A stretch of DNA of 64,000 bases from Guillardia theta CCMP2712 (GCF_000315625.1 NW_005434650.1:571069-635068); one strand, 5' to 3'; counted from the stretch's first letter, positions 832 through 29,371 are shown. Notes: generated from the letters alone by a model not told the origin. Numbers and translations are program-made.

Positions 832-1059
832 TGCTGGGATCCTCAGGCTTGAGCCTGTTCCGAGGGGGGTGTTTAGAACGACAAGTTTGAAGACAGGTTT
901 CAAAAATTGTTGAATTTTTACTAGAAATTTGCGCTAAGTGGGGGACATTTTTCAGTAAATAAACAAATGTTCGAGTGCTTTGACGAAATTTATATACCCC
1001 TCGTTGAAATTCCGAGATGGGGGGGAGGCCGTCCCTGTTGTAGGCACGCAACCGCAGTT

Positions 1060-2299: not shown

Positions 2300-2539
2300 C
2301 GTCGGGCACAACCCTTCGCCTTGACTAGCATGCCTGACATGGCGGAAAGCGCTGCAGGGAGGGGAGGGGAACATGCAGGGGGAGGCTGCCTGAGGGATGA
2401 AGAGAGGCAGAGAGGCAGATGTGAGGAGGAGAGTGCTCGGGGACTGCATGAGAGAAAGAGGTCACGAGGTCGAGGTCGGGACTGCGCTGCTCTGGCATCC
2501 GTGAGGAAGGTTGGTTTTCAAATTGGGGCGGGAGGGATC

Positions 2540-8500: not shown

Positions 8501-11500
8501 GAGGTTGTGCCCTTCACCAACTCAGGGTTGGAGCAGGTGAGCTCGGCTCCGTGTCAAGACACTTCCTGTCAGCTCCTCCTCTGCTTCGAGTGGGTCTCTT
8601 ACAACATCGACAATCAGGACAACGGGATGTTTGCTGGGGGCTCCAGCAGTGACGGCAAACTTGTTACAGTCCATGGGTTCGGCTTCTCCCCGGATTTCAC
8701 CTACACGTGCGAGTTCACCATCGGAAGCTGCAAATATCAACAAGTTGGGACTATTCAGAGCTTCCAGGAGCTCAGCTGCCCCGTCCCAGCTCTTGCTGCC
8801 TCCTGCCCTGCTTCGTCAGGGACTCTGCAGCTTCTCCTGGAACCCCTCCCGTCTCTCTGTCCCGCCCTGTCTGTTCTGAGCCTCACCTACCGGCCTTCAT
8901 GGTCGTCGATGGGCTCGCTGCGACTGCCAGCGAGCGGGTCGGAGACGGTGATGGTGTATGGCAACGGGTTTGTAGAGGGCTCGATATATCAGTGTCAGTA
9001 CGTGTGTGCAGGAGTCAGTTTTACCATGAAAGGGTACTGGAGGGACACAACCATCCTTGAATGTCACTCGCCCACCTGGAATTTCGCCGCTACCACGTGC
9101 AAGGTGTCGATATTGCAGGACAGCCACATCGTTCGCTTCCTTCCCCACCCGGTGAACTCGTCTGACGTCGTCTTCTTGTATCCTTGTACTGACGGAGTCG
9201 TGGCGCCATCCTCGTTCTCCTCCATCGGGGGATCTATCCTCACTGTGTTCGGGTTTGGCTTCAACACAGACGTCTCCAAGGACTACATCTGCATCTTCTC
9301 CGGCCCTTCACTGCAGAACTACACGCAAGCCAGAGCGGTTGATGCCAACACCATCATCTGCCGAGCGCCGGACCAGTGGGGATTGACGAGGCCGTCAGGA
9401 CAAGTCGCGGTGGAGGTGACGGAGAACGAGGTTCCATTGCCCTGCATCAACTCGTCACGGTGCTGGTCCAACACGACCGTGAGGTTCGAGAGCCTTCCTC
9501 TCATTCGAAATCTCTCCATCTCAACCTTCTCAGCCTCGGGCGGGGACACTCTGACCATCTCGGGGTATGGCTTCGGGTACTGGCCAGTAGAGTTGGAAAT
9601 GCCGGGCAAGCTCTGCATCTTCAGAAGCAGCCTGTCGCCAGGTGCAGTGTCAGTGCAGTCGTCGATCTCGGTGGTGAGCCCAGCTCGCATGGAGTGTCGA
9701 ATTCCAGAGTGGAACTACAGCACAATTTCCACCGGGGTCCTGCAGGTCAGACTGCAAGGGGCATACGTCCCGTTCCTGCCCAACGGCCAAGTTACCTCGC
9801 CCTTCGTCTTCGAAGCCGTGTGGGGCCACAAGAATGTCTCCCAGAGTCTGGCCAAGGGTGGACATGTCGTGAGCATACAGGGAGTCGGGTTTCGGCTCGA
9901 GGCGACTTACTCTTGCGTCTTTGACTATCAGGGCAATGCCACGTCATCAACGGCGCAGTTTCTTGACACCCAGAACCTCCTCTGCCTCATTCCGAGCTGG
10001 GTCTATCCTCAGGCGACTGCGCGTTTTTCTGTGCATGACGTGTCGGGGAGCAGGGAGCTGGACAGGCTGCCGGGTACCGACGACTCGTTCACCTTCTATC
10101 AATCCTGGGACTCAGTCTCTTCCTCGAACCCCGTCGATGGGCTGGCGAGCGGGAACGAAGAGCTCCTGCTCGAGGGGTTCGGCTTCGTTCCTTCGGGCAT
10201 GTACCGCTGTGTCTTCCAGCGGTACGTGGACGGAGAGGTCAACCAGACCATGACGGTTGAGGGACATTCAGTGAGCCCCACTACAGTCTCTTGTCAAACT
10301 CCCGCCTGGGGCCTGCAGTACGTGGCGTTCCAGGTCGAGGCCGAGTCGGAGCTGAGAAAGGAAGGGCACACGGCCGTGCTCTTGACGATGGATGACGTTG
10401 CAGTCAACTTCACCAATCGCACGCTGGACGCTGTGGAGGTCGACACCTTCTCATGGTACGAGCTGTGCACTTCGGTGGAGCAGAGGGTGGATCAGCCGCA
10501 GAGAGGGTCATGCATCTTCCGCTTCCTGGTTGCCTGGTCCTCCCAGGGCACATTCCCTTCCACGTTTTCTGCTGCAGGAGGGGAGCTGATACACGTGAAC
10601 GCGTTCGGCCTCTCGGCCTCGCTGGAATACCTGTGCGTCTTCTACTATCACACGGGTGACAGCCTGCAGTACAAGACTTTCTCCAACGACATCACACGAG
10701 CATGGCAGGGGTATCGGTTCCTGCGGAGGTTCTTCAGCCCGATCAACAAGACATCATTCGAATGCACCTCTCCTGCATGGAACTACCAGCACGTCAAGAA
10801 CGCGACGCTGGAAGTGAGGATACAGGATGAAGTCACCGACGTGTTCAGCTGCCAAGTGGTCAGCAAGGCTCCAGGTCCTCCCAGGTATATTGAGTTTCTC
10901 CCTGGGATCCTGCAAGTCAGCCCGACGAGCCTGCCAGCGCTGGGCGGGTTCTTGATAACCATCTCGGGCTTCGGCTTCGGTAACGAGAAGCACGTGTGCG
11001 ACTATGGGGGGCTGCAGCAGACGGAAGCAGTTGTATCCACTTGTTGTGAAATCCCTCAGCAACCCTGCATGTACTATCAGGTGCTGTGTGTAGTGGAGGA
11101 TTGGTACTTCGACCCTGGGCTCTTCAACCTGTCCGTGATCCCTGCCTCGCTGTCCTCCCCGATACAGTTCTACGACAGGAACGGAGAAGATTTCGTAGCC
11201 AAGGAACAGTTCGCGCAGACTGTAGATTTCTACACTGTCTGGAACAAGACTAATCCAACTTTCTTCGACCGCCTGGGAGGAATCGATGGAGGGAGGTCGC
11301 CAGCGCTGACGATCACTGGGAGAGCTTTCTACGAGCAGAACAAGTACTTCTGTGTGGTTGGGAGCACCCTCAACGAGAGCGCAATGCAGCAGGCTCAGAG
11401 TGAGCCGGCAGGCAGTATCGCCGATCTCCTGACTTCCTACTCCAACTTGGTTGTGGAGGCTGTTCACTTGGAGTACAGCCCAGCATACAGGGTGAGCAGA

Positions 11501-14500
11501 AGCGAGGTGGTATGCATCCCTCCTGTGTGGGACAACAGCACCTTGTGGCCGTATGCTGCGTTCCCCGTCAACCTGAGCATTGTTGTGATGTCAGGGTCAG
11601 AATGGGGCATCGTTCCCTTCCGATCGCCTCTGCTCTCGCCTTCCTGCAATCAGCAGATGCTTCTACTGGAGGCGACAACCGCGGATGCCGTCCACATCAA
11701 CAAGCCTCCTCAGTTCTACACCAAGGGCAACATCTTTGTGCCGGCCGACTCGTCCTACGTGATCATGACGACTGAATGGATCGAGTACCTCTCGGCAGGG
11801 AACACCTATGACGGGAGGAGGGTGGACTACGTGGAGTCGCCTCAGTCCCTCACGTTCTCAGTGCAGTTGACGACCAACGAACAGAAGCTGTTCACGCTGC
11901 CTCCCTCCATCACCAGCAACGGCACCCTCCAGTTCAGGACCAAGTACCTGGCGTCAGGCAGAGCTGAGATCTTGGTTCAGCTCAAGGACAACGGAGGTAC
12001 AGAGTTTGGAGGGGGCGATCTCTCCAGCCTCAAGAGGTTCTTTGTCTCCCTGATCCCTCAGATCGACATTCCGACATTCCAGTTCGGAGGCAAGATCGTG
12101 GTCCTCGAGGCGGAGAGCTCGGAGGCGAACTCCAACTTCTTCTACCGCATCATGACTGACCTGATTCACGGGCCCTATGAGTTCTTCCAGCAGATGACCT
12201 TCAAGCTGGTCCCCGAGGAGAACGAGTACCTGTTCGACCTCACCATCACTAACAACTTCGACTTCGGGTCCGGCCTGAACCTATTCTTCAGAACGCGAAA
12301 CTTCACCTTCGGCAACACCAGCGTTGAGATCGTCCTCAACAGCTTCGACTTGATCACAAGGCAGTCCAGCTCCCTCAACAAGACATTCGAGGTTATCATC
12401 ATCCCCGTCAACACTCCACCTTCCTTCCAGCTCGCCGTCGACCTGATCACTGTCAACCAATCCTCTTCTCGATCGTGCCATCAGTTGGCCCATCAGATCT
12501 TTAAAGGGCCCACCACCTTGTCCTCCCTTGTAGGCCCGAAGGGAGAGGATTGGTTTGAGAGCGCGCAGGATCTCACGTTCAAGATCAGTGGAGGAGGAGG
12601 AGGAGGAGGCGATTGCTTTGCCGACCTGCTGGAAAACGTGTCCATCTCCAACGATGGGATACTCTGCTTCACCCCGGTGCCCCGCATCGTCGGCCATGCG
12701 ACATGCTCGCTGACCTTGTATGACAACGGAGGGACCTTGAACGGAGGGAAGAACGTCTCGGGCACGCTGGACTTTACCGTTGAGGTCGTCCCTGTCAACG
12801 ACGAGCCGTTCTTCAGCTTCAATGAGGTTGCCTGCGAGCATGCATCTCAGTATGCCTGCCAGGTGAACGACAGTTACTTCGAGGTCCGGGTGCCTTCGAC
12901 CTTCCTAGGAGAGTGCTCGAGCCCTGTCTGCCAGGGCTGCGACTTTCCGATCCTGATCTCCAACTTTGCCAAGAACGTCACGGCCAGCAGGCAGTATTTG
13001 TACAACGAGCGGAATCAGCAGTTGACCTTTGACATCGTCCCTGAGTCGAACGTGTCGCTCCTTTACAGCAACCTTTCCATAACCCTGGAGACCATCTTTC
13101 TATGCATGAACAAGGACGTCCTCGGATCGGAGAACTTTGGGATCTCCCTGTGGGACGACGGAGGTTCGTCCAACGGCGGGGTCAACAACTTTGGGCCCCT
13201 TCTCTTCCGGATGACAGTGTACCTTGTCAATTCAAGACCGACCTTCGACCGTTGTGACAACGGAAGTTTGACCTTCTGGCAAGGAAGCGGGGGGCACATG
13301 ATCCCCTCGTTCATCTACAACATTGACAACGGAATCGGAAAGCTGAATGACGTCATCGAGGCTGACCAGATCGTAACCTTCACTACCTTCCCATATTTTG
13401 ACCTGCCAGGTTTGATTCAAGATCCACTGATCTACCGGAACGGGACGCTAAGCGTATCCATCGGAGCTTCCATCAACGAGAAAAACTTCTCCTTCGAAAT
13501 AAAAGCGCAGGACAACGGAGGGACTGAGGGAGGTGGGGAAGACACCACAACGTCGAACATGATGATCTACGTGGCCAAATCGTATCGGATCGTACAAGTC
13601 CACCTCGATCCAGGCGTCGACTGTCTGCACTTGGAGGAACAGCTGAAACATGCTCTGCTTCCTGAGGATAACATCGTAGATGTCCGCGTCAGCCAGTGCT
13701 CTACCGGTAGCGAATGTGACGATACCGTCAGGAGTGACCTGCTCGTCGACCTTGAAGGTCTTTCTGCAAGCAATAGAAACGTGGTCTTCATATCGACTGA
13801 CTGTAACCCGTCGCTGCATCTGGACCTACAGGGTTTCTTTGGGCTCAACTTCAACAGCAAGACTTTCAACAGGAACTCTGCACGCGTCCCTTCGTTCTCA
13901 CTGGCTCGCGAGACTTACTGGACGTACGAATACGGTGAGCTCGCCCTGCAGGATGCTTGTAGCACCTCCGATTACTTGCAAGTTCAGCTCGACGACACGC
14001 ACATGAGCCTAACCCTGAAAGATTTCATCAATGACATCATTGGGCCAATCAATGTTGACATCGGATCCACGGGAAAGCTCGAGTTATACTTTGATATCAC
14101 ACCGACGGAGATCGTGGTGAATGATGCCTCCTACATGAATAGCAACGACACTTTCTTTGCAAACACAAGCAGATCGGTAACTGCCTTCTGCCCCATAGAG
14201 AGCAATTGCTACGACAACTCTTTCTTTGTGAACTGTTCGATTGAAGTTTTTCTTGGGAAGGCACAGAAATTCTTGAATGGGCACGTCGTGTATAATATAT
14301 CAATGCGGAATTCAGATCAAAAAGCTGTCTTCACAGTAACAATTAACCCTGTCAACCAAGAACCTCGTTACACAATGGTAAAGACGAGCATCGAGCTGGA
14401 AGAGAATGTTACTCTTGTTTCGAGTCAATATGAGTTTGCTAGTGACGTGTTATCCGGGCCTCCGGTCTACGACGAGCTCCAGCAGCATCTGACATTCCAC

Positions 14501-17500
14501 CTGGAGACACTGACGGGCTCGTGGCTGTTTGTAAGCCCCCCGACTATTCTGATTGCTTCGCAGAAAGCATACATCAACTTCTCTGTGGTGCCGTTCTTGA
14601 ATGGTAATGCAAGCTTCGTCCTGACCTTGTACGATGACGGCGGCTACATGTGCGGAAGGAACGTCTCCACTAGCAGCAGTCTTTCAGTGACTGTCCATCC
14701 TGTCAATCAAGTCCCTTTCTTCGAACTCAGCTGCTCTTCTCTCTCTGCTTCAGAATGTGTCAACACCTGCGGACAGAACAGCTGGCCCGATTTCTCCTCG
14801 TGCTCCTATAATATGAAACTCTTACAAAACTGCTTGACCTGCTCCCCGGCTCCCATGTCAGTGAACTGTTCTGCTGGCAAAGTCCCCTTCTACCTGCCGT
14901 CCTTCGCAATCAACATCAGGCCTACCGGCTACATGAGTACCTCGACAGATCGGGAGATCGCAGCCATTGAAGACGAGAGCGATCAGTCGGTGTCGTTCTA
15001 TGTCCCACCTGCTGGCCCTGCTGATTTGATCTCGAGTCTCGCCCTCGACAGCAATGGCAACCTGTCGTTCTGTCTTCAGGAGAACTCCGTCGGCTCGACA
15101 TCCTTTGCTATCGAGCTGCATGACTCTTTGGGCGGTGTCTACGGGACTGCGAACCTGACTGTTGATGTGCAACGTGTCAACCAACGACCGTCATTCTCCC
15201 TTTGCAATGGAGGGATCGTGAACGTGTGGAGGGGCATCACCTATCATCAAGTGCCGAAGTTTGCCGACAACATCCTGAAGGGGGATTATTACAATGGGAA
15301 TGATGTTGAAAATTTTCAGCTCATCACTTTTGTCGTCACTCAGTTCAGTGATCTCTCAATCATCAACACGACAACGGTAACAGTGACGTCAGAGGGCACG
15401 TTATCGTTCGAGGTCCTGCCGGACGCGTTCGGCACCGTCACGATGATCGTCCATGCTGTGGACAACGGAGGGACACAGAACGAAGGGGTTGACACGTCAA
15501 TTGCACACACAATTCAGATATCTGTCATCGGATTTTACGCTCAACTGACAAGAGCTGTGCAGGGAGCTTGCCCTGAGGTTGAGATGCTTACAAACAACTT
15601 GCCGTTGAACTTGAGCTTCGTGTATGGTGGAGGAAATGACGTGCAGGAAGTCAACTTGGCCCCTGTGTGCGAGGGCAATCAGCACGTGTACTACAATGCA
15701 TCGGACTGTAAGTTCATCTACATCATGATGCCTTACACCGAGATCAGTGCCGACTTCCGTCAGAAGGTCAAGAGTTGGGCAACAGAGTATGGATGGACGG
15801 TCTCGTACTTCGATTATAGTGACAGCAGAACCTCCTCTTTTCAAACGAATCAGAACTACACATCCTGTGAGTACGGGACTGACTTGACTGTCGACATTCT
15901 GTCCTGTCAGATCTCCGAGTACGTCAACGTTACCTATGACGGCACTGATCAGACGATGTCTATTGTTGTTTTGAATGTTGTTTCCAATGTAGTTGGCCCT
16001 AAGAGTGTTTTGGTCAATGATATGGACCAACTTCAGCTGTCATTCCAAGTCTCGACCATGTCTCAGTACGTCTTCGACTATCAAGCTGACATACGAGCAA
16101 GTGACTCGACCTTGATCACCGGCGGCGAGGGTCACTTTGACATCACTTGCGATCAGCAGCTAGAAGGCTCGCGGATGGTTGTGGTTAAGTGCACCCATGG
16201 GAGTGTTCTCCTGGGGAAGGTTGAAAAATACCTCAACGGCCGGATGAAATTCCAGGTCAACATGGACGGGACAGAGAGTCGAGCGGAGTTCGAGCTTGAC
16301 ATCCGCCCGATCAATCAGCAACCAAACTTTGAGATCTCAAGGCAGCTCATCGACGTTTACTCCTCAGATCCTGATCACTACATCTATGACTTTGCCTTCG
16401 GAATCTCGCCAGCGCCTGAGGTGACCACTCAATCCGAAAAGTGCATCCAGGACGAGTACAAACAGAATGTCATCTTCAAGATTGCCACCATTGACATTTT
16501 TGGCGACATCTTCTCTATCTTTCCCTCCATCGTAACTCAGGGGAACAAGGGGGCTTGCAGCGACTTCTACTATCCCAACGGAACTCTGACCTTCTCACTC
16601 AACAAAGGGCAGCAAGGTAACGCGACGCTGCAAATATCCGCCAGCGACTGCTACGACAGCTCGGCGAACTGTAATCCCCAGGGGTTTCATCGAGCAAACT
16701 TCACCATCGTAGTTCAGCCCGTGCCAAGGCCAACATGCTTCCAGCTGAGCTCGAGCGTCTACCAGGCACAGCAGTCAGACTCGGCGCAGGTCTTCTGGAT
16801 CCACGGGCTGCTCAAGGACGAGTATGGTACTCACCAGTCAAGTAGCGCAACCTTCGAGGTTCAGGGCTACGACCAGGGAGCGATCTCAGACGCGCACTTC
16901 TACCCCAACGGCAGCCTCATGCTGGCAGTAAGCAAGTACACCTTCGGCAAGTTCCCCATGGTGATCCGACTCGACGACCCAGCGAATGTGGGGCAAGAAG
17001 GGGGCGATTGCTTCCTACGGAACTTCAGCCTTGACATTGCCAAAGAGAACTTTCCGCCCTACTTCTATCTGTCGACTCCAGTGATCCAGATATGTGAGAA
17101 CCACAACTACAGCCAGCAGATTCTGGTGGATATCGCCACGTCGAAGGATTCAGAGGCAAGGGATGGTCCACAGAACATGACTTTCTGCGTTGTGGCGCTG
17201 GGTGAAGAAATGAATATCTTCCAACTCGGCCCATCTGCTGGGGTAGATGGAATTTTCTCATTTCAGCCGATACCGAATCACTTCGGCCATCGCGCGTTCA
17301 ACATCACGCTGATAGACGAGGGCACATGTCAGGATTACAAGTCGGCCAGCGCTACCTACCAGCTGGACATCTACATCACGGCCAACAACGACCCTCCTTC
17401 CTTCCAGCTGTCAAGTGGTCTACTGCTAGTCAACGAGTCGTCGATCGAGGGATACTTGGTTGAGGTAGAGCAGTTCGCGGTGAACATCTTGAAAGGTCTT

Positions 17501-20500
17501 GACCTGCCATACCCCTTCGGAGATCAGGACCAGAACGTCTCGTTCCACATGATCGTCAAGGACGTGTCAGTTCCCGCAAGGTACCACATCTCCTACGGAA
17601 CTGTCGACACCTTGCTGCTGGACAACAGCTGGCACATCAGGCCGAATGGGGCCCTGGAGTTTCAGCTGCACCAGTATGTCAACGGCAAGGCAGAGTTCGA
17701 GGTCTACATGGAGGATGACGGAAGCCTCGCTTGCGGGGGGGCGAGGCAGGCTCAGCAGAACTTCACCTTCCTGCTGGAGGTCCTGCCGGTGAACCAGAAC
17801 CCGAGGTTTGAGTTCTCTCCCTCCTCCGTGCAGCAGGGCGGCGAGATCCCCGTGCTGTGGCTTCTCGAGTCGAGCCAAGACATTGTGAGGGAGGAGGGGA
17901 GGAACCTGCTGGTCAACGTCACATCTGGCGAATGGGACGAGGGCGACCAGGGCCTGATCTTCCAGGTAGACCTTGTGGTCGCGCCTGATGATGAGATAGG
18001 AGCTGATGATGTTTCTTCTCAGGTCGAGTTCGTGTCCGGCGATCCGGATCTGCTCTTGGGCCCGCAAGTCGTGCTGAACTTGAGAGGTTTCGGCTGCAGC
18101 TTTGCTTCTGCTAGGCTTTGCTACTCCTCTGCGGATTTTCTTTTCAGGACGGACAGGTGATTGAATCCTCCTCCGACCTTCTCTGCCTCTTCTCATTGTC
18201 TTCAACCCTCTTCCATCCCCAACTCCTTGATCTCCATCTCTTCCAATCGCTGATCATCTTTGCATTTCAGCCATCGTTTCGGATCGAGCCTCTACAACTT
18301 CGTTCTGAGAGACACGGGGTCTTATGCGGGGCCGAACCGAGGAGAGACGAGGAAGCTGCTGATGGTGAACGTTGTGCCTGTCAACGACGAGCCTCGCTTC
18401 ACCATGACTGAACATCTCCTGAACATCCGGATGGGTGAAAACTGCAACCTACAAGCTTCCCAGGCGATGATGTACAACCTAACGATCAGTTCCATCAGCA
18501 ACAACAGCGAAGTCTTCAACTTGACTACTCTAGCTGACCTGTTAGTCTTTCCGACGGCCTCGTCATCGCAGCAGGACTTGTACCGAACTATCTCGGACAC
18601 TCTGAGCACGTTTACAGGGAAGAAGATGTCCGTGAGCCTCAGGGCTCCCTGCGTCTCGGGTCCGTCAGACTTATCTGCCCTGATGAACATCACTTGCTTC
18701 CTGTACGTTGAAGGCTGTCGGGATGCCGCTGACCACCTGGCCGTACGGAGCCAGCTGCAGACATCGATTGCTGGACTTATAAGTCTGAGGGACTCAAACT
18801 CGACCCTACCTGTCTCGGTCTCCGACGGGACATTCGCGTGCCTTTTGGACCGCAACATCTTCGTGGTCCCGAACTTCATCACCAAGTTCACCGTTGGCCC
18901 GTTCGAGGGCTACAACCACGACAAGAGCACAAGGAGAAGCTACGAAAACCAGACGGGCTCCTTCGAGTTTGCTAACGTCAACGGTGCCCAACAAGAAACT
19001 CCCGTCATCCCTCGCGTCCTCCTGCCCTGCGGGTCCCTCGTCTTAGAGGTGACCAACTCTTCCATGAGCAGCACAAACTTCTCCATCACCCTCGTGGACT
19101 CTCATGCTGACGACGGAACCACCCAGCGCTCCCAGACTGAGCACTTCGTCGTCCAGATCCTCCCCTACGTCAAGCTTCCCAGCTTCGACCTGCGTGTGCA
19201 GGAGTTGACGATGTTTGAAGGGTCTGGAGAATTCTTCAACAATTCTGTGGCATACAACATACTCTCTGGATCAGGTAACTGGGAGAACACGACCTTCAAC
19301 ATTGTAGTGCAGTATCCAAGCATGTTTGCTGTGCTACCAACGATGACGCTGGATGGATCCTTGAATTTCACTCTCTCGCCATATCAACATGGGACAACAA
19401 CGCTGAGCATAACCTTGCTGAGTGTCTTCCATGACTACAAGACCTCGGTGATCACCTCGGCGGTCAAGGTGATAGTGTTGAAAGTGCTGCCGGTAAATCA
19501 GAAGCCCACTTTCATAGTGCGGGACGTGTTCATTGTGAAGAACTGTCCGGTGCAGGCAGATGAAGCATGTCAGAACAGGTTCCACATCGTAGAGAACTTG
19601 GTGTCGCAGCTAGTGGTGGACATGCCGAACAAAGTTTGCAACTCTCAGGGCGTCTTCTGCGACAACCAGAATGTCACCTTCTTCATTGATGACGTCACTA
19701 ACCCCTCGTTGTTCAATCTTCAGCCAGTGGTTCATGCCAACGGTTCGCTGGTCTTCAGCGTCAATCCTGACCTGACCGGCGAGTCTTTGGTGATGCTGCA
19801 CGCGACGGACGACGGGCCCATGAACAGCGACCCGATGTTTGCAGGAGACAACACGTCCACTCGACACTCCTTCAAGATCCTCATCGATACCATCGACTAC
19901 CCGCCGACCTTCGCCCTTCAGCGGAACGTCTCATGTGGAAACCTGAACGCGACGAGGAACGAGACTTGTACCTGCCCGACCCTCGAGAATTCAACCATGA
20001 GCTATCAGGTCTGCTCGGTACCCATGAACATCCTTCGTAACGATTCAGTCAACGTCGAGATTCTCCAGGGAGCTGGTCTCCTGCGGATTGACAACTTCGC
20101 CTCCTACGTCTCTCCTGCCGAAGGGTTCTTTGCGAGACATAGATCGATCTTCGGGTTCCCAAAGCCTCCGGCCAGTCTCGTGACGTCAGCCGTGAACTTC
20201 ACGGTCCAGAGGAGCGACCCTGTGGCAGCGATCGGAGGGCTGGGCAAGTATTACACAGACTATGTCGTCTCACCTGACAAGAAACACATTTATGCCGTCC
20301 AGAGGGACACAAACTCTGTCTCCATCGCGCAGATTCAGAATCAAAACATCTCGCAGACAGCGTTCCTGGACAGAAGGTCCGACGGCGAGGACAGGTTGAG
20401 ATTCCGAGGCTTCACCCAGTACGCTAAGAACGACAGTGACATCATCACATACAACCTGACCGACCTCTGCCACTTGTCGTCGGTAGTTGTCGATCACAGG

Positions 20501-23500
20501 CCCTACATCATGAACTCGGCAGGATGTCAGTACATTCCAGAACCTGCGCCTGTTCCCTCGGACTGCCCCATCGACAAGCTGACTGTCCTTTGCGACATCA
20601 ACTGCTGCAACGAACTTCTGCTGCAGACTGTCGGAAACTGGGTCTTCGAGTCTGCTAGCCTCTATGGTGAGCAGTCCGTCCAGAAATCCCTGTCGAGCCT
20701 CGGCAATCTGACGTGCAACTCCAGCATGTGTGTGTACTCCAGGAACAGACTGCAATCAAACTGCGATGAGAGATATGACACAGTCTACGGACCCGCCACC
20801 TTCCGCGACTCGTCGGGGGTGTTGGGAGCGGCTCTGGTGCTCGGGGCAGGCCTGAGTTGCAAGTCTGACGTGTATGCTGACTGGGACCGGACGCCACAAG
20901 CGAGCATGTCGCCACTCAACTTCATCTCCAACAACGGCGTGAAGGAGTCGATTCAACTGAACATGTTGAACCCAAGGTTGGTAGTGTCCGGGGACACGAC
21001 CACTGTAGCAAGTGTGCTGCAGAAGCAACTGGCCGTCTCAATTTGGTTCACGATCGAGAAAGACACGGTCGAGTCGGGGCTGGTGAGCGCGGGATACTTT
21101 GCTACATGCGTGAAGGGCTGGACGATCTCATATTCAAGAAGCTCTACCAGTACCTCCTTCTACTTCAACTTCACCGCCAGCAGCAGCATCCAGAGGAAGA
21201 TCTTAAACACTTACCGCAGGACCCCGACGCTGGAACTCGGCAGCTGGGCTCACCTGGTGGTGTCCTACAACGGGACGGGAGTTGACTTCTACCTCAACGG
21301 AAACCTCGTCCAGTCAAGGATCGCCTGCCCAGCTGACTGTGGGGTCCTCAAGTACACTTCCGACGCACCTCAGTGCAAGTTTGACAACCCGTTCTTGCTG
21401 GGGGACCTGGGAGTTACCAGCAACCCTCAGCAGCACACGGGGATGGTAAGAAGTGTCAGGATCTTCAAACGAGCCCTGGTTGCCAGCGAGGTTGACTTCC
21501 TCTACAAGCTGGAGAACTTGACAACAACTGTGCTGCTTGACAACTACTGGGTCCACGGAACCGGAAGGGTAGTCAACAAGACCATCCTTGGGGCGATATC
21601 GCCTAGTGGGGACTTTGCAAACACGAATGAGTCGACGAGCATCATGTTGCACGGGAGGTTCAGCAAGGGCTTCGGGTACCGCTGTGAGTTCATCACTGCA
21701 GGGCAGACGGGCGTGTCCAACATCTCCTACCCCATCTGTGATGACCCTCTCTACTGCAGCTACCTCATCTGCCTGGACATATTCTGGCCTTCGGGGATGA
21801 GAGCGACTACGATGCGACTGATCCGACGGAACATGACGAGGGGAACAGAGGCGACGGTCTTGCAGCGCTTCTGCTTCGATGAGAGCTGCGGTTACATCCC
21901 TCCTGACCAGCGGAATGTCAGCGACTGGTGGATGATAGTAACGGAGGACGGGTCCACGAAGCTCGACACAGGCTGCACGGGAGTTCTCACAACCTTCCGC
22001 TTCATCATCCGGTCGGAGATCCAGAGGCTCGACGTGACGTCCAAGGCCGTCAGCCGGGTCAAATCTCTATCGCCGCTGATAGTGACTCAGGACTTCAAGT
22101 TTGACACCTACGCCGTCAACGTTTCTAGCCGCGCCATCATCGAAACAAACCTCACGTCAAGGAACTTCACCATCAACGTCGGCCTGTGGAACCGGACGGT
22201 CTGCCCGTCGGGCACACTGACTGTCATCAACACGTCCGTCTCCATCCTGCCGTACTTCCATGACTTCTGCAACAGCACCAACAGCACGTGCAAGGGAGGG
22301 ATCTGTACTTACTTCAACAACCTTACCGTCCTCGGTGTCTCCTCCATCACCCCCTTCGAGTTCTCCGGTCAGACCTACCTGATGGTGGCCAACTACTGGG
22401 ACGGGAAGAGCACCTCAGTCTTCTCCCCGCTCCTGCACATTACTGTCAGCGGCACCTCGGGGGATGTTGGACTAGTCCATGTGCAGTCAGTATTCACCAG
22501 CGGGGCCAGGAAGTGGTTGTACGTGGATGTGAACTCTCGATCCGACGACAGCAGGCCGCTGCTGATCCTGACGTCCTTCGTTGACAACTCAGCTGGCTAC
22601 CTCTTGAACTCCTCGAGCGGACTTCCCTTGCAAGCTTCTGACCCTATCCCGTTCCCAGTGTGGTCCTCCGCGTCTTCCTGCTCCTTTGAGATCTTCAACG
22701 TCTCCTACGTGGCTTTTGCCTCCTTCACGAGCAACCAGGACTCTACCATCTTCGCCCTCGGCGTCCCGAAGAACTCGACATTCAGCTACTTCGGCGACCG
22801 GCTGGTCCCTCACGATCGGGAGTTTGCCAACAGGCGGGTGACTGCGAAGAAGGTCCTGTCTTTCACAACCACCAACGCCTTTGACGTGGTACATCTCACC
22901 GCCGACAACCGCAACTTCGTCATGTTCGCCAGCTTCATGCTCAACGGGGCCTCGCAGATCTTCGAGCTCAAGGGCTCCGGAATGATCTCGTCCGCTGACC
23001 TCCTGCAGTCTCTGAATGTTCCCTATGCCACGTCCTTGCGCGCCTTCACCTACAGCGTCACCTACATCATGGTGGGAAGCGCATCGAGATTGACAGAAAT
23101 GTATCGGTGGAACGGGACTCAGTTCAACGGCGCTCTGTCCGCCAACACACCTGCCTCTGGATCGTCAGGAGGACAACAGATCCCGTTTGCGAATGTTTCC
23201 TCGATTGACCTCGTGCAGTGGCCGAGCTCGGACGGGCTTCATACCTGCAACAACCAGGTCGCCTTGTTGTTTGTCGGGCTTCGATCGTTCGACCCGAATG
23301 TCTCGGCCAGCGTGAAGATACTGAGGGGATGGAGGGAGTGTGTGTCAGAAATGCGCAGGCCAGTCGCTATCGACATCCTCCCTACTGGCAACTTCGTCTA
23401 CATCGCATCTGCAGAGTCTCGCTCGATCTCCGTCTTCTGGCGTGACCCTGCCGTCGGACATCTGATCTACAGCAGCAGCGCCTCGTTCACCTCAGGATAC

Positions 23501-26500
23501 TCAGCTCTGATGCAGCAGATCTCCACCAACGTGATCACCAAGGACAAGCTGCTGAGCAAAACCGACTTCGGATTCCCTTTCCGCTCCATCCGGTCGATCC
23601 AGGTGAGCGCGGATGCTCAGAATCTCTACGTGACGAGCTTCAACGACAATGCGATCACCGTGTTCAACGTCGACCAGACGACTGGCGGACTGACTCGCGT
23701 GCAGACGCTGAGTGAGGGGCAGAGCATTGCTGGGACTGTGACGAAGGGAATCAAAGGGGCGACGGGGCTGCACATTGCCAACCTGGTGTATGTGACAGGA
23801 TGGTTGGACGATGCTGTGAGTGTGTTCAACAGGAACTCGAACGGAGAGCTGGGGTTCTGCGATGCGACATACAACGGAGAAGTGAACTTCCTGTCTTTCA
23901 ACGTGTCTTCACCCAACACTCTGATCCCGATCAAAGCGCTGACCACGACCCAGTCATTCCAGGAGGGGAGCTTCTACCCGAAGAGGATCGGAAGTTTCAG
24001 CAACAACTGGGCTCTGACTGCCCGAGCTACGAGGCACTTTCAGATCGACCAGGTCGACTACCTCGCTGTTGCCTCTAGCGATGGTGAGACGGGCGTCGGA
24101 ACCGTCACGGTCCACCGTTGGAGCTCTTCCTCCACCAAGTTTGTCCTGCTCCAGACTCTCTCCGGCAACCAGGCGGCCCATTCAGTCACCTACTTCAACA
24201 TCAGCGACCGTGCCGGGCATGTCCTGCACTACCTCGCCGTCTCCAACTCCATGACTTCAACTTGCAACCGTCAGTCAAACGGGGTCAACATCTTCTCTTG
24301 GAACCAGGGCCAGCAGCTGTTCGAACTTTTCCAAAACCTTCAGAACACTGATCCAGCCCGCGAATCCCTAACGGGGGCCGTGCACGCTGAATTCTTCACC
24401 TTGAAGGGAGACGTGCACTACCTGGCTGTGGCGTACTATGACGATTGCTATAGAAACTCCACAGTTGAGTCCGTCATCTACCGCTGGAACCCCTATGGGT
24501 GGATGCGGCAGACCAGCGAGACGGCGATGACCTGGACCCCTGGCTTCGAGCCCTTCCAGAGGGTCCAGACGTTTGGAGCCGTTTGGATCGAATTCCAAGA
24601 TCCAGTCCTGGTGATCTCCAACTTCTATGACGGGCATTCTTGCTCGTTTGACAACGTCGACGTGTACGTATTCAACAAGGATCTGTACAACGACATGCTG
24701 CGAAGTCCAGCTGGATCGTTCGAGATACGGCAGAAGATAGCTGGACATGGGACCACGGGGACCAAGATCTTCAACCTGGAGGGGGTCGGCATGCTGATGG
24801 CTGTCGCAAACAGGCAAGCCGATCTCTACAGGATGGACGACATGAGTGTGTTCGATGTGGATCCTGTGATCTACATATGGAATGACACTTGTGTGAACCA
24901 ATGGACTGAGAATCGCCCGTCGGGATGCTTTCTCTTGTATCAGACCCTGCAGTTCCAGTCTTCCATGGGCAACGTCACCATCCCCGACAGCCTCTACACA
25001 ACAGCAGCCTCCTCCGGCTCTTCCATCTTCAACGAGTTCCGTGCCAACATGACGGCAAGGTACTGCATGGAAAATGCCTGCACGACGTCGGACGACGGGG
25101 CGACGAAGGTAGTCAACCATGTCCGGGGAGCAACGAGAGTTCACTTCTTCGAGGAGGGAGGCAACGTGTTCCTGGCTGTTGCCCAGTCAGTCTGCAACTT
25201 CAGTTCCTCCAGAGCTGCCTGCATCGGGGAGATGGGGATGAACGGGGCTGTTCCGCAGTCCAAGTCTTCCATCTTCCAGTGGGAGGCGAGGACGAGAAAG
25301 TTTGTGGAGATGCTCGCGATCAACCAGGAGGATGCCAAGTACCCACGGCATCATCAGTACGCTATGAGAGTTGACGTGGGTCAGGCTCTCAACATCGAAG
25401 ACTTCGTCATCGGCGGTCAACACTTCCTGGTCTTCTCCAGCCATACCCACGGAGCGCTACTCTTTCTATGGCGCTTCGAGCTGGTCAACGGGATGACTGG
25501 GCCCGTCGGTGTCACCACGGCCGATACCGACGCAATGTCAACCATCTTCGTGCTGAACGAGCTAGAGCACTCGCTCGTCACTTTCGACATCGCCAGCGTC
25601 TACGACGGTCTTGGCCACCGACAGAGTCTGTGCGACAACGTGGGCTTCAAGTTCCGGGGAACGCAGGTCGAGCAGCTGCTGACCAAGAGCGGGCAGGCGG
25701 TGGATCCGAGCAAGAAGTCAGCGATGGGGCTGAATGGAGCAAGGAAGATCATTTCCTCCTGCCTGGGGTCAAACTCTTCTAGAAACATCTTCTGGTTGTT
25801 CCAGACTGCCGACTCAGCATTCAACAACATGTGCAAGGTCACAGTCCTGGCCGGGCCGAGACGGGACGAGGAGGTCTGTTCTTCTATAGGGACGGCGATC
25901 AGCAAGGCCGGGGAGGCTGTTCCCTGCCAGTCAGTGAGCTTCCTCGTAACGCAGTTGTCCGCTGACCCCCCCCAATTTGTCCTGCCCAACCTCACGCTGC
26001 ATATCAACGGGACCCTCTCGCTCCTCGCTCCCAGCATCAGCGGCTCCGCGAGCTTCAAGGTGGAGCTCTTGGACGACGGGCTGTCAACCAGCTACGAGGG
26101 GAGGCGGTTAGGAGACGATCGATCCTCGCCGAGGTACTTTAACCTGGTCGCCATCCCCACCACCTCCGTCCCCTTCTTCGTCCCCTTCGACGTCTTCTGC
26201 AACCAGGGCACAGGAACACAGTCCCTCGTGTTCGCTTCTGACCTCTCCTTCGGTGCTGCCGGCAGTTTCATCTCGGACATGTACTGGGAGTTCACCTGGT
26301 CCAGGGCAACCTTTCTACAGACCCAGCCACTGCTCTCGGTCGAGCTGGTTGAGGGCATTCCCATGGGTATCGTCAGAGTCACCCCTACCGCCGACGGCTT
26401 CGGGAGCACAGTCTTCACCGTTCGCCTCGTGAACAGGTACTCCCTGACGCTGAAACGCGGCAGCTTCGCCTCTGTCTACAAGAACTTCACGCTGACCGTC

Positions 26501-29371
26501 CGGCCTGTCAACCAGCCGCCGACCTTCAGGCCGAGAGTCCCTTCGCTCACCGTCATGGCCGGAAACGGAAGCTACTTCGAGAAGGGTTTCGCTACGCAGC
26601 TCACGGCAGGGAATGCAGCAGAAGACAAGACACAACTTGTATCGTTCAGCATCGCTGGCATACACTTAGGAAGTCAGTACTACACGCAGGACCAGCTCTT
26701 CAGCAGCTTCCTTCTCAACTCTACCGTCCTCGCGTTCACCGTCCTCCCCAACACAACGGGAACTTTCAACCTGACATTGATGATCAAGGACAACGGCGGA
26801 ACGACGGACGGAGGAGTCGACTACTCGCTCGTTGGCATGCAGCTCGTCGTCATTCCTTCTAACAAGCTCCCCAAGTTCGCTCCTCGGGCTCTGAAGGTCC
26901 CAGAGGCGAAGCTGGTCGTCCCCCAGGTCTTCACTGCCTTCTTGGTCCGAGAGATCTCCGACCTCAAGTTCAAGGCGAGGAACCTGAGCTTCTGGACCGA
27001 GAGCTCCAACAAGAACCTCTTCCTCCAGGGACCCAACATCTCCTACCCTGACGGCACCCTAAGCTTCACTCTCAACCCCTTCCACAACGGCGTTGCCAAC
27101 CTGACCATCTGGCTCTATGACTCGTCCCAGCAGCTCAACAGGAGCACCAACAAGGACTTCTTCACAGCACAGCTCACCGTCATCCCTGTCAACGACCCTC
27201 CTACCTTCAACGTCACCCCCGAGTATCGTTGCGTAGAGAACAGCGGGCCGCAGATAGTCCGGGGATTCGTCTTCGACGCTCTCCCCGGCCCTCCGGACGA
27301 GAGCTGGCAGAGCATTTTTTACAATATCAGGATCGAGAACCTCTCCCCCAACCTCTTCTCCTCCTCCCCGTACCTCGACGCCAGCGGCACCCTCTACTTC
27401 ACGAGCGCTCAGGACGCCCATGGCACAGCGACGCTCCTCATCTCCGCGTTCGATGACGGGGGGTCAGACTTCGGAGGCCTCTCCACCAACGCCTCCCTCA
27501 GCTTCGTCGCTGTCGTCCGCGTCCTCCCGCTGCCGAGGCTGCTGGGAATCACTCCAGCAGTCCTCCCGTCCAGCACAAGCATGCAGGTCACAGTTCTTGG
27601 GTTGTACTTCGGGTCCACGTACAGCAGGGGATACGCAGCGGGCGAGTATCGAAATGCGCAAGTCTTCTTCGGCAACCGATCATGCGCCAACGTGTCCATC
27701 CTGTCTGACAGCAAGATCCTGTGCGAGACGCCGCTGCTCCAGGGAGCCCAACAGCTCTCGCTGCGAGTCAACGAGCTGGGGCTGGACCGGCGAGTTTCTC
27801 TTCCCAAAAACGTCTTCTTCAACTCCTTCTACGTGGGAGGCCTCGGGGTCGGGGCGACGGGCGAGGGTTTCATGGGATACGGCTACTCGGCACTGAGCTC
27901 CGGAGGGGTTCAGTTCCACCCTGATGAGATGGCAATCGACGGTTCCATCCTGGCCCTGTACACAGAAGCACACGTCATCGTCTTCGGCGGCTCCTTCCGG
28001 TCTGTGAACTCCGTGATGGTCAACCACATCTTCATGTGGAACGGGGTCACAGTCAGGCCCTTGGGCTTCGGAGTGGACGGGGAGGTGAAGGCGATCGCCA
28101 AGTACGGCAAGAGCCTGTTGGTAGGAGGATCCTTCACCAAGGGCTACTCCACACGAGGAGCAGCGACTCACAGCGGCGGCCTGATCAGGTGGGACGGTGC
28201 GCGATGGCAGCAGGTGGAGGGAGTTCTGCAGGGGGAGATCCGGACCATTGTCACCAACGAGAGCAGCATCTTCGTCGGAGGGGAGTTCAACCAGTTCTGC
28301 TCGAGGCCCTTCAACGGCATCGCCATGTTCGACGGGACGCAGTGGCGGTCGCTCGGGGACGGGGTGTCAGGGGGGAGCGTCTCGGGTCTTGCCGTCTACG
28401 GCAGCGTCCTCGTGGTCGCTGGCAGCTTCACAAGCGCCAGCAGCCTCCCCATCGCAAAGCTCGCGCTCTGGAACGGAACTACATGGAGAGGCCTTGGGCG
28501 GGTGAGCTATTTCTCCATCCCAACTCCATCCTTGCTCCATCCCTGCTCTACCATCCTTCCCCTTCCCCCTCCTTCCTCTCCCTCTCCCTCCCCTTCCTCC
28601 CTCCNNNNNNNNNNNNNNNNNNNNNNNNNNNNNNNNNNNNNNNNNNNNNNNNNNNNNNNNNNNNNNNNNNNNNNNNNNNNNNNNNNNNNNNNNNNNNNNN
28701 NNNNACACAACACCCCCCTATCCGTAAAAAAAAACAAAAAAACTCTCCATCTCCCTCTCCCTCTCCCTCTCCCTCTCCCTCTCCCTCTCCCTCTCCCCTC
28801 TCCCTCTCCCTCTCCCTCTCCCTCTCCCTCTCCCTCTCCCTCTCCCTCTCCCTCTCCCTCTCCCTCTCCCTCGTTCCCCATCATCTTCCACTACCCTGAC
28901 GAGCTGCTGCAGGTGGAAGGAGACGTGTTCGCTCTCGTGACGTGGGGCTCCGACTTGTTCGCAGGCGGGGCGATGAAGGCAATCGACGGGTTGAGCGTCA
29001 ACGGCTTTGCCCGCCTCTCCCTCCTCCAGGACTACTCCCAGTACGCCAACCCCTGGGCTGCTGTCGGGCTTGGCATCAACGGCTACGTGACAAGCATGGT
29101 CACAGCTGACGACTGCGTGTACGCTGTTGGCGCTATCGACAGGGTCTTCTCCTCCCCAGGGCAAGGAGCAGCAGCGAGCAACGGCTTCAGAGTCTGCAGA
29201 GCTAGTGGGTGGGAGGAGTACGAGGCGTTTGTGGAGGACGAGAATCGGACAAGCTCGATCTTGTACGTGATCGCGCCTGCGGGAAGAACAGTCCATCCCT
29301 CCTCCCTCCTTCCTCTCCTCAACTATACCAACTCGACTTGGACCAACTCCACCAACTCTAGTGTCATATAA
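2540..29371 (+). CDS. Giant secreted multidomain protein (~8768 aa): signal peptide, IPT/TIG array, cadherin-like Ig array, lactonase-type propeller with LamG and EAR/EPTP inserts, cadherin-like repeats, IPT, Rax2-like propeller
   Basis: Exons 2540-18156, 18271-28501 and 28913-29371 (26307 nt). Starts MARIFVVFSCFVLSRG. GxGF..YxCxF..CxxPxW repeats span ~2620-11690. VNxxPxF...GTLxF...LxDxGG repeats span 11695-20130 and 25850-27530. LamG motif WAHLVVSYNG..FYLNG. C-terminal GxVxA..GGxF..WDG repeats. Confidence 0.9.
18157..18270 (+). other. Intron 1 of the giant gene (114 nt, GT-AG)
   Basis: ag|gtgatt...gctgat...tttcag|c. Splicing gives FLFRTD-S-HRFGSSLYNFVLRDTG and completes a cadherin-like repeat. 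Both ORFs are in the same frame. Confidence 0.9.
28502..28912 (+). other. Intron 2 of the giant gene, with a (CCCTCT)n tract and a 100-N gap (28605-28704)
   Basis: cgg|gtgagc...ctgac...ctgcag|gtg. Splicing gives WRGLGR-VEGDVFALVTWGSDLFAGG, restoring the propeller blade. Confidence 0.9.

What the first reader, a model, noticed from the sequence alone, without database searches (positions are those of the whole stretch)
20078..25930. Russian-doll nesting: cadherin-like repeat > lactonase propeller > LamG and two EAR arrays
Seen: an intact repeat reads PxF..xxF..GP..E..QxxxF..P.L..GTL.F..DDGG. One repeat is split. Its first half ends LRIDNFASYVSPAEG (~20126) and its second half resumes AGPRRDEE..CQSVSFLV..INGTLSL..SGSASFKVELLDDG (~25847), about 1,900 aa later. 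Inside, lactonase-type blades come in three blocks: VVSPDKKHIYAV (~20240-20375), IDILPTGNFVYIAS / IQVSADAQNLYVTSFNDNAITVF / GIKGATGL (23350-23880) and GMTGPVGVT..GLNGARKI (25485-25760). Between them sit LamG + IPT + EAR set 1 (20630-23330) and EAR set 2 (24010-25480). Inference: a branched multi-propeller head projecting sideways from an Ig rod, built by serial domain insertion.
Basis: partly seen in the sequence, partly recalled or inferred. Interest (0 to 1): 0.8.

Follow-up and report, generated by a model that had tools for sequence, protein, structure and literature searches.

The report
Four-deep nested propeller head, algal protein
Inside one giant secreted protein of a unicellular eukaryote, a rod-forming repeat is split by a propeller that itself carries two more propellers, one of which is again split by lectin-like domains; this nesting is conserved in dozens of uncharacterised relatives and is unusually deep, but its function is unknown.

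Summary
All named motifs lie at the stated coordinates, in one open frame of a giant eukaryotic gene. That gene joins ORFs 2321-18160 and 18260-29371 through a 114-nt intron.

Pfam confirms Laminin_G_3, EPTP/EAR (two arrays) and Lactonase. Profile comparison supports the IPT call.

The nesting is supported:
- The two cadherin-like halves match complementary parts of the intact repeat: positions 7-32 (P 8e-5) and 39-120 (P 3e-17).
- The lactonase-type propeller begins with the back half of a blade and seems to end with the front half of one (that end weakly, P 0.015), which suggests a single closed ring.

The topology needs correcting:
- So the Cys-rich, LamG and IPT-like domains sit inside that EAR propeller. 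This gives four nesting levels.
- The hub propeller probably has six blades, not seven.

At least 51 cluster representatives carry the core of the module, and about 20 longer ones show the same domain order. Named members come from the cryptophytes Guillardia theta and Rhodomonas salina. No simpler intermediates were found.

Pairing of the two halves could not be folded directly. Function is inferred as an adhesin or receptor head.

Unchecked notes from this scan report the same architecture on other pieces of this genome.

The parts
2540..18156 (+). Exon 1 of the giant gene. It has a putative signal peptide (Met at 2540), about 19 IPT/TIG copies (2633-11029) and cadherin-like repeats (11828-17809).
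   Evidence: Pfam TIG E 6e-42. jackhmmer finds 19 TIG copies and the cadherin-like repeat hits. The hydrophobic N-terminus follows the Met.
18157..18270 (+). In-frame 114-nt GT..AG intron joining the two large ORFs.
   Evidence: The sequence shows the GT and AG ends. A cadherin-like repeat spans the splice: 25.6 bits spliced against 4.5 bits unspliced.
19904..20125 (+). First half of the split cadherin-like repeat (Q549-622). It holds the P-x-F boundary, a Cys-rich loop and strands A-B.
   Evidence: The family profile of 24 sequences aligns to positions 7-32 of the intact repeat, P 8e-5, against controls of 0.3-0.76.
20126..20209 (+). C-terminal half-blade that opens the lactonase-type hub propeller (Q623-650). 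It is the proposed velcro partner of the last half-blade.
   Evidence: hhalign of the head profile against the bacterial blade profile: head columns 2-27 align to blade positions 25-50, P 5e-4.
20210..20380 (+). Lactonase-type blade (Q651-707, contains VVSPDKKHIYAV).
   Evidence: hhalign gives a full blade, P 2e-12. The AF2 model shows four strands at pLDDT about 91.
20381..20554 (+). Detached first blade of the EAR1 propeller (Q708-765).
   Evidence: Whole 7-bladed propellers align to model range about 66..1048 at Z 28-30 and rmsd 2.5-2.7. The EAR-blade profile gives P 5.5e-5 and the lactonase blade profile P 0.46.
20570..20956 (+). Cys-rich domain of unassigned fold (Q771-899), nested in EAR1.
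   Evidence: It is conserved in the family, with invariant Cys residues. AF2 pLDDT is about 85-93. Pfam gives only a weak LCCL hit, E 0.013.
20957..21514 (+). LamG / concanavalin-A-like domain (Q900-1085), nested in EAR1.
   Evidence: Pfam Laminin_G_3, E 5.9e-16, 59 bits against a cut-off of 27.6.
21515..22324 (+). IPT/TIG-like domain (about Q1105-1200), a small beta subdomain and a low-confidence linker (Q1281-1355), nested in EAR1.
   Evidence: hhalign against the gene's own TIG repeats gives probability 94%, P 1.4e-7. Pfam and PDB sequence searches found nothing. AF2 pLDDT falls below 50 at Q1278-1354.
22325..23341 (+). EAR1 propeller, blades 2-7 (Q1356-1694).
   Evidence: Pfam EPTP, three stretches, E 4e-6. 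The AF2 model shows about 25 strands at pLDDT 88-95. Foldseek matches LGI1 EPTP at E about 5e-12.
23342..23875 (+). Three lactonase-type blades of the hub (Q1695-1872).
   Evidence: Pfam Lactonase E 3e-10. hhalign finds three blades, P 1.9e-22, 2.6e-17 and 1.4e-10.
24002..25474 (+). EAR2 propeller, seven contiguous blades with long loops (Q1915-2405).
   Evidence: Pfam EPTP, five stretches, E 5e-19. The AF2 model shows seven four-stranded blades. Foldseek's top hits are LGI1 EPTP at E 1.2e-11.
25475..25855 (+). Lactonase-type blade (Q2406-2455), then a variable loop and the N-terminal part of the last blade (Q2456-2532).
   Evidence: hhalign gives a full blade at P 2.4e-11 and a partial blade (positions 2-36) at P 0.015, which is weak. 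The AF2 model is poor here, pLDDT about 30.
25856..26179 (+). Second half of the split cadherin-like repeat (Q2533-2640), strands C-G up to the next P-x-F boundary.
   Evidence: The tail family profile of 14 sequences aligns to positions 39-120 of the intact repeat, probability 98.9%, P 2.6e-17. hmmsearch places it at hmm positions 27-119.
26180..28604 (+). Continuation of the rod: further cadherin-like repeats, one TIG domain and a repeat-rich C-terminal region, up to the assembly gap.
   Evidence: Cadherin-like repeat hits at Q2684-3087. Pfam TIG at Q3092-3170. The N run lies at 28605-28704.

Best explanation
The stretch encodes a conserved module of about 1,900 residues inside one giant secreted protein. 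The protein has a signal peptide and a long rod of IPT/TIG and cadherin-like repeats.

Architecture (supported):
1. One cadherin-like repeat is interrupted after its first two strands.
2. In the gap sits a lactonase/YVTN-type beta-propeller that acts as a hub. It starts with the back half of a blade and ends with the front half of a blade, so its two ends meet (velcro closure) next to the host loop. It probably has six blades.
3. After its first full blade the hub is interrupted by an EAR (LGI1-type) seven-bladed propeller.
4. That EAR propeller is itself interrupted after its first blade by a Cys-rich domain, a LamG lectin-like domain and an IPT-like domain.
5. After three more hub blades comes a second, contiguous EAR propeller.
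6. The remaining hub blade and half-blade lead back into the cadherin-like repeat.

Function (inferred, not shown): the result is a compact, branched, three-propeller head projecting sideways from the rod. It probably serves as a multivalent ligand-binding head of a cell-surface or matrix adhesin or receptor.
For: - Domain identities: Pfam, local profile tests against bacterial lactonase-family propellers with shuffled controls, and Foldseek matches of both EAR propellers to LGI1 EPTP.
- Split repeat: the halves align to complementary, non-overlapping parts of the intact repeat. These are positions 7-32 at P 8e-5 and 39-120 at P 2.6e-17, against controls of 0.3-0.76.
- Hub closure: the head begins with blade positions 25-50 (P 5e-4). 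The tail ends with blade positions 2-36 (P 0.015). Full blades score 2e-12, 1.9e-22, 2.6e-17, 1.4e-10 and 2.4e-11.
- Discontinuous EAR1: the AF2 model of Q645-1844 built on 31 sequences has mean pLDDT 83.2 and pTM 0.76. Complete 7-bladed propellers superpose on model residues about 66..1048, for example Ski8p at Z 30.2, rmsd 2.6 and 306 aligned, and WDR61 with 279 of 293 aligned.
- The detached segment matches an EAR-blade profile (P 5.5e-5) but not the lactonase blade profile (P 0.46).
- In compact relatives the part of EAR1 after the insert is 283-306 residues, about six blades.
- Conservation: the same domain order occurs in G. theta (25% identity) and in about 20 longer representatives of 50% clusters. 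At least 51 representatives carry the non-blade core of the module. Two copies are in Rhodomonas salina.
- One gene, secreted: a cadherin-like repeat spans the intron, and the N-terminus looks like a signal peptide.
Against: - No model contains both cadherin-like halves or all hub blades, so their packing is inferred from sequence complementarity and blade arithmetic.
- The first half is invisible to a plain HMM. It adds 2-4.5 bits, and 7-13% of random segments do as well.
- The last half-blade match is weak (P 0.015), and AF2 was uninformative for Q2406-2640 (pLDDT about 30).
- The AF2 construct lacked most hub blades. This could have biased the detached blade towards EAR1.
Contacts are deduced only from the alignment ranges of VIA-align.
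- No RNA evidence was obtained for this locus: 2 reads.
- Function rests on analogy only.
Confidence: 0.72

Rival explanations
1. A seven-bladed lactonase propeller is split 2+3+2, with LamG-IPT-EAR1 as one linear insert between blades 2 and 3 and EAR2 between blades 5 and 6. EAR1 is a contiguous propeller.
For: The segment Q708-765 has the size and four strands of a blade and directly follows a lactonase blade. Pfam's Lactonase family is seven-bladed. The AF2 construct lacked hub blades 4-6, which might have biased the assignment.
Against: Complete 7-bladed propellers superpose on model range about 66..1048, so they include this segment. Only about six blades follow the insert. The segment matches an EAR-blade profile at P 5.5e-5 and the lactonase blade profile at P 0.46. 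The bacterial blade HMM never hits it in 23 relatives.
Confidence: 0.17
2. No true nesting. The blade blocks and repeat halves are decayed remnants or independent beads on a string. Alternatively, the partial propellers complete each other between molecules (domain swap) rather than within one chain.
For: Pairing of the halves and closure of the hub were not seen directly. Block 3 and the second half were modelled with low confidence.
Against: The order, the junction positions and the half-blades are conserved down to about 25% identity in more than 20 relatives, which argues for constraint. The halves are precisely complementary. No block has enough blades to close alone. The 1,200-residue model has pTM 0.76.
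Confidence: 0.07
3. Gene-model or assembly artefact. Unspliced introns, a chimeric contig or fused neighbouring genes create the apparent insertions.
For: The organism has introns. The ORF tail runs through an N gap and a microsatellite. There is no RNA support.
Against: The frame is open for 3,448 codons. Independent contigs of public runs match 20000-25999 without differences, except for two short uncovered stretches (about 20113-20217 and 23562-23760). The same domain order appears in proteins from other sources: NCBI G. theta, EukProt R. salina, ENA, JGI and Logan.
Confidence: 0.04

Closest known systems
Integrin subunits: the beta subunit nests PSI > hybrid > beta-I, and the alpha-subunit propeller carries an inserted alpha-I domain (my own knowledge; the alpha propellers are among the structural matches)
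   Same: These are extracellular adhesion proteins in which a domain is inserted into a loop of a host domain, three levels deep in integrin beta. A seven-bladed propeller carries a ligand-binding domain inserted between blades. Integrin alpha propellers align to EAR1 at Z about 27.
   Different: Here there are four levels. Two of the guests are themselves propellers, the host at the bottom is a rod repeat, and there is no sequence relationship to integrins.
LGI1-4, TSPEAR and ADGRV1 (metazoan EAR/EPTP proteins)
   Same: The EAR/EPTP seven-bladed propeller is present: Pfam hits, and Foldseek matches to LGI1 EPTP at E about 1e-11. EAR is combined with LamG as in TSPEAR and ADGRV1. As in ADGRV1, the setting is a long rod of Ig-like repeats (domain list in the abstract of PMC13729602).
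   Different: No such nesting is known to me in the animal proteins. In TSPEAR, LamG precedes a contiguous EAR array, as its name says. Here LamG lies inside the EAR propeller, and the EAR propellers lie inside another propeller. The organism is a unicellular eukaryote. Identity to animal EAR proteins is about 22-27% over blades only.
Bacterial 'beta-propeller fold lactonase family' surface proteins (YVTN-type, tandem 7-blade units)
   Same: The hub blades match their blade profile strongly. Such proteins also combine with Ig-like and cadherin-like domains (Pfam lists).
   Different: The bacterial proteins examined have contiguous propellers, 14 blades as 2 x 7 at a period of about 53 residues. 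Two bacterial-type hits that combine propellers with Ig-like or cadherin-like domains showed no cadherin-like repeat halves around their propellers.
Sec13-Nup145C and other propellers completed by a distant or foreign blade; NanB/NanC sialidases (lectin domain plus propeller with an inserted domain)
   Same: These are propellers whose ring is completed by a non-adjacent segment (3jrp, Z 26.6), or a ConA-like lectin domain beside a propeller with an insert (Foldseek top hits).
   Different: There the extra blade comes from another chain. The sialidases are enzymes with six-bladed catalytic propellers. The resemblance is one of fold and arrangement only.

Membership tests
EPTP/EAR repeat propeller (PF03736; LGI1-type) | Pfam EPTP matches above the gathering score | tested here: met
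   EAR2 scores 68.5 bits and EAR1 27.2 bits, against a cut-off of 21.
EPTP/EAR repeat propeller (PF03736; LGI1-type) | Seven-bladed beta-propeller fold resembling LGI1 EPTP | tested here: met
   Foldseek matches to LGI1 EPTP at E 1.2e-11 (model A) and about 5e-12 (model B). Seven blades are seen in both models. EAR1 is discontinuous, 1+6.
Lactonase, 7-bladed beta-propeller (PF10282) | Pfam match above the gathering score | tested here: met
   40.2 bits against 21.7 for Q1690-1880. Blocks 1 and 3 match only through family profiles.
Lactonase, 7-bladed beta-propeller (PF10282) | Seven blades in one ring | tested here: inconclusive
   Five full blades plus two complementary half-blades make six. 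The seventh candidate belongs to EAR1. No full model of the hub exists.
Lactonase, 7-bladed beta-propeller (PF10282) | Catalytic lactonase activity or active-site residues | not tested
   No active-site comparison was made. The label is used for the fold only.
Laminin_G_3 / concanavalin-A-like (PF13385) | Pfam match above the gathering score over nearly the whole model | tested here: met
   59.4 bits against 27.6, model positions 12-150 of 151.
IPT/TIG (PF01833) | Pfam match above the gathering score for Q1086-1280 | tested here: not met
   No TIG hit for this segment or for 17 relatives.
IPT/TIG (PF01833) | Profile similarity to bona fide TIG domains | tested here: met
   hhalign against 19 Pfam-positive TIG copies of the same gene gives probability 94%, P 1.4e-7, 72 columns.
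Cadherin (PF00028) and bacterial cadherin-like / Big_9 | Pfam match above the gathering score | tested here: not met
   There is no Cadherin hit. Big_9 scores only 17.2 bits against 23.6 in the upstream ORF. 'Cadherin-like' rests on the P-V-N-D-x-P-x-F boundary and the DDGG motif.
Cadherin (PF00028) and bacterial cadherin-like / Big_9 | Inter-repeat calcium-binding motifs | not tested
   Not examined.
Nested (discontinuous) domain architecture | Host-domain segments on both sides of the guest are complementary parts of one domain | tested here: met
   Cadherin-like halves align to positions 7-32 and 39-120. Hub half-blades align to positions 25-50 and 2-36. EAR1 is 1+6 blades.
Nested (discontinuous) domain architecture | The segments pack into one fold in three dimensions | tested here: inconclusive
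   Indicated for EAR1 only, from VIA-align alignment ranges and lengths on an AF2 model, without coordinates. It is not testable here for the cadherin-like repeat or the whole hub, because of the 1,200-residue limit and because spliced constructs are not accepted.

The most novel reading that the evidence does not exclude
This is the type example of an uncharacterised family of surface proteins in cryptophyte-like protists. Its family-defining module is a four-deep nest: Ig-like repeat > six-bladed hub propeller > EAR propeller > Cys-rich/LamG/IPT, plus a second EAR propeller on the same hub. To my knowledge that is deeper than the classic three-level nest of integrin beta, and it includes propeller-in-propeller insertion. 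It would also show that the EAR-LamG pairing of animal TSPEAR and ADGRV1 exists outside animals in a different topology.
Probability: 0.4. Interest if true: 0.7.

Novelty: new variant of a known kind. Interest (0 to 1): 0.55.

Why it matters
Domain insertion is known, but multi-level nests are rare, and nests in which a propeller hosts a propeller are hardly documented. This case is natural and strongly conserved, with at least 51 sequence clusters down to about 25% identity.

It offers three things:
- A test bed for how discontinuous domains fold. Every guest has adjacent termini: velcro propellers, and a detached first blade.
- A warning for automated domain annotation. Pfam saw only fragments, and half-domains were invisible to single HMMs.
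- A new uncharacterised family of giant extracellular proteins in algae that can be grown in culture (Guillardia, Rhodomonas), combining EAR and LamG modules otherwise studied in animal neurobiology.

The function remains unknown, which limits the immediate impact.

Tried and rejected
1. Plain HMM detection of the first repeat half failed. An N-terminal sub-HMM did not find it. The spliced-versus-random test gave only 2-4.5 extra bits, and 7-13% of random segments did as well. Only family profile-profile comparison worked.
2. The first AF2 job (Q1690-2640) used six sequences and gave pLDDT 54. It was uninformative for block 3 and the second half.
3. Word-index protein searches found only three architecture homologues. 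The search for medium-length fragments found nothing. The exhaustive profile search was needed.
4. I looked for a shorter natural intermediate, a cadherin-like repeat holding only a lactonase propeller, to fold the whole nest within 1,200 residues. None turned up among the bacterial hits or the family members.
5. RNA evidence was sought. Only 2 reads from a run of another organism code (B; the genomic runs that hold the stretch are A), listed under the same species label, were laid, so nothing can be said.
6. The Pfam and PDB sequence searches of the IPT-like domain came back blank.
7. Model coordinates are not exposed, so inter-blade contacts could not be measured directly.
8. I at first thought the 'KVTVLAGPRRDEE' element was absent in G. 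theta. A better alignment showed it is conserved across the family as the last hub strand followed by P-R-D-E.

Full report
**Numbering and context.** Q numbers the residues of ORF 18260-29371 (+). Residue i starts at window position 18260+3(i-1).

The window is eukaryotic. The finding lies in an open frame of 3,448 codons that ends at an assembly gap (N run 28605-28704).

This ORF and the 5,279-codon ORF upstream (2321-18160) are in the same frame. A 114-nt GT..AG interval (18157-18270) separates them. When that interval is removed, a cadherin-like repeat spans the junction, scoring 25.6 bits against 4.5 bits for the unspliced end. The two ORFs are therefore one gene.

The upstream part opens with a hydrophobic signal-peptide-like N-terminus (Met at 2540). 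It carries about 19 IPT/TIG copies and many cadherin-like repeats. No transmembrane segment was seen in the parts read.

Pfam matches above gathering score:
- Laminin_G_3 (E 6e-16).
- EPTP in Q1360-1695 (three stretches, E 4e-6).
- EPTP in Q1880-2410 (five stretches, E 5e-19).
- Lactonase on the middle blade block (E 3e-10).

Blade blocks 1 and 3 had no Pfam hit alone. Profiles built from four orthologues scored 150 and 92 bits on bacterial lactonase-family propeller proteins, against 7 bits or less on shuffled or reversed controls. The EAR profiles did not cross-hit.

**Relatives.** Word-index searches found three proteins that share the same domain order:
- a 75%-identical JGI protein;
- Guillardia theta GUITHDRAFT_133265, about 25% identical and sharing the same order over the whole module, including the junction at Q622;
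- a metagenomic protein.

A profile search of 1.84 billion representatives found many more. At least 51 representatives carry the non-blade core of the module. About 20 that are long enough show the same order, flanked by cadherin-like repeats. That order is:
1. first half of the split repeat;
2. a blade segment;
3. the Cys-rich domain;
4. LamG;
5. the middle (IPT-like) domain;
6. EAR1;
7. three blades;
8. EAR2;
9. a blade;
10. the second half of the split repeat.

Two of these proteins are Rhodomonas salina entries in EukProt. The rest come from metagenomes or Logan assemblies. No member with a simpler, partial nest was seen.

**The split cadherin-like repeat.** A 119-position HMM of 28 intact repeats matches Q2545-2640 at positions 27-119.

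The first half is too weakly conserved for a plain HMM. A family profile of 24 first halves aligns to positions 7-32 of the intact repeat, P 8e-5, against controls of 0.3-0.76. A family profile of 14 tails aligns to positions 39-120, P 2.6e-17.

The two halves therefore cover complementary, non-overlapping parts of one repeat.

**The hub propeller.** I built an independent single-blade profile from 265 blades of 19 bacterial 14-blade proteins. Applied to the module, it gave:
- three blades in the middle block (P 1.9e-22, 2.6e-17, 1.4e-10);
- one full blade after the first junction (P 2e-12);
- one full blade after EAR2 (P 2.4e-11).

The roughly 26 residues right after the first cadherin-like half match only the C-terminal half of a blade (positions 25-50, P 5e-4). 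The last segment before the second half matches the N-terminal part of a blade (positions 2-36, P 0.015, weak). Controls gave 0.19-0.42.

This is the signature of a velcro-closed ring whose two ends meet. That is what an inserted domain needs. No block has more than three blades, so none could close alone.

**The correction.** A second AF2 job on Q645-1844, using a 31-sequence family alignment, gave mean pLDDT 83.2 and pTM 0.76.

In a structure search against 48,161 PDB representatives, complete seven-bladed propellers superpose on model residues about 66..1048:
- Ski8p, Z 30.2, rmsd 2.6, 306 residues aligned;
- WDR61, 279 of 293 aligned;
- integrin alpha propellers that carry an I domain;
- Sec13 with the Nup145C insertion blade.

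It ends with the EAR1 array, which by itself has only about six blades. In compact relatives the array is 283-306 residues.

Sequence agrees with the model. This segment matches an EAR-blade profile (P 5.5e-5) but not the lactonase blade profile (P 0.46). The bacterial blade HMM never hits it in 23 relatives.

Hence EAR1 is itself discontinuous, one blade before and six after. The Cys-rich, LamG and middle domains are nested inside EAR1. The hub is left with about six blades.

**The other domains.**
- The middle domain is IPT-like. It has no Pfam or PDB sequence hit. It aligns to the gene's own TIG repeats with probability 94%, P 1.4e-7.
- EAR2 is a contiguous seven-bladed propeller. Its best PDB matches are LGI1 EPTP.
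- EAR1 also matches LGI1 EPTP.

**Mechanism (inferred).** The protein is a secreted or surface-bound rod of Ig-like repeats. From one repeat a compact head projects. The head is a hub propeller presenting two EAR propellers, and one of these carries a LamG lectin-like and an IPT-like domain.

By analogy with LGI1 (EAR propeller binding ADAM22/23), LamG domains and integrin heads, this head is most likely a multivalent binding unit for adhesion or recognition. Nothing here tests that.

**Limits.**
- No RNA support was obtained. Two reads only were laid, from a run carrying another organism code (B; the genomic runs that hold the stretch are A) that was listed under the same species label.
- Public contigs confirm the DNA of 20000-25999 without differences, except for two short uncovered stretches (about 20113-20217 and 23562-23760).
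- The hub's blade number, the pairing of the cadherin-like halves and the last half-blade are not directly modelled.

**Comparison and novelty.** Nested domains are well known. From my own knowledge, integrin beta nests PSI > hybrid > beta-I, and the integrin alpha propeller carries an I domain. Literature searches found nothing on this family or on propeller-in-propeller nests of this depth.

I rate it a new variant of a known kind. It is an uncharacterised, conserved family whose defining module is a four-level nest.

Earlier unchecked notes of this scan report the same architecture on other pieces of this genome. The 75%-identical JGI protein may be one of those copies.

Noticed in passing
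window 18157-18270: An in-frame 114-nt GT..AG intron joins ORF 2321-18160 to ORF 18260-29371. The finding is therefore part of one gene of about 9,000 codons or more.
   Followed up: yes
window 28440-28900: The tail of the ORF runs through a 100-N assembly gap (28605-28704) flanked by CT/CCT-type microsatellite that translates as PLPL/SPSP runs. The reading frame beyond about 28440 is unreliable and may be intronic.
   Followed up: partly
window 2540-11029: A putative signal peptide (Met at 2540) is followed by about 19 IPT/TIG copies with a conserved G-x-G-F...Y-x-C-x-F motif. Pfam Anth_Ig (E 1.5e-17) overlaps one of them.
   Followed up: partly
window 27800-28600 (Q3180-3440): After the C-terminal TIG domain lies a repeat-rich region with recurring GGSF/GGEF...W.G motifs, suggestive of yet another propeller. 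It had no Pfam hit at E 0.1 or better.
   Followed up: no
P0119 (residues 563-1732) and P0037 (residues ~990-1230): Some family members carry further large extra segments inside the module. P0119 has about 1,170 residues between the IPT-like domain and the EAR1 blades. P0037 has about 240 residues within the first hub blade, which I read as helix-rich from the sequence alone. The nest seems to tolerate still more insertion.
   Followed up: no
P0021 and P0022 (Rhodomonas salina, EukProt): Two distinct paralogues with the full module occur in one cryptophyte species. Notes of this scan suggest several copies in the window's genome too.
   Followed up: partly
window 20570-20956 (Q771-899): A conserved Cys-rich domain of about 130 residues, confidently modelled (pLDDT about 85-93), has only a sub-threshold LCCL hit (E 0.013). 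Its fold was not identified because propellers filled the structure-search lists.
   Followed up: partly
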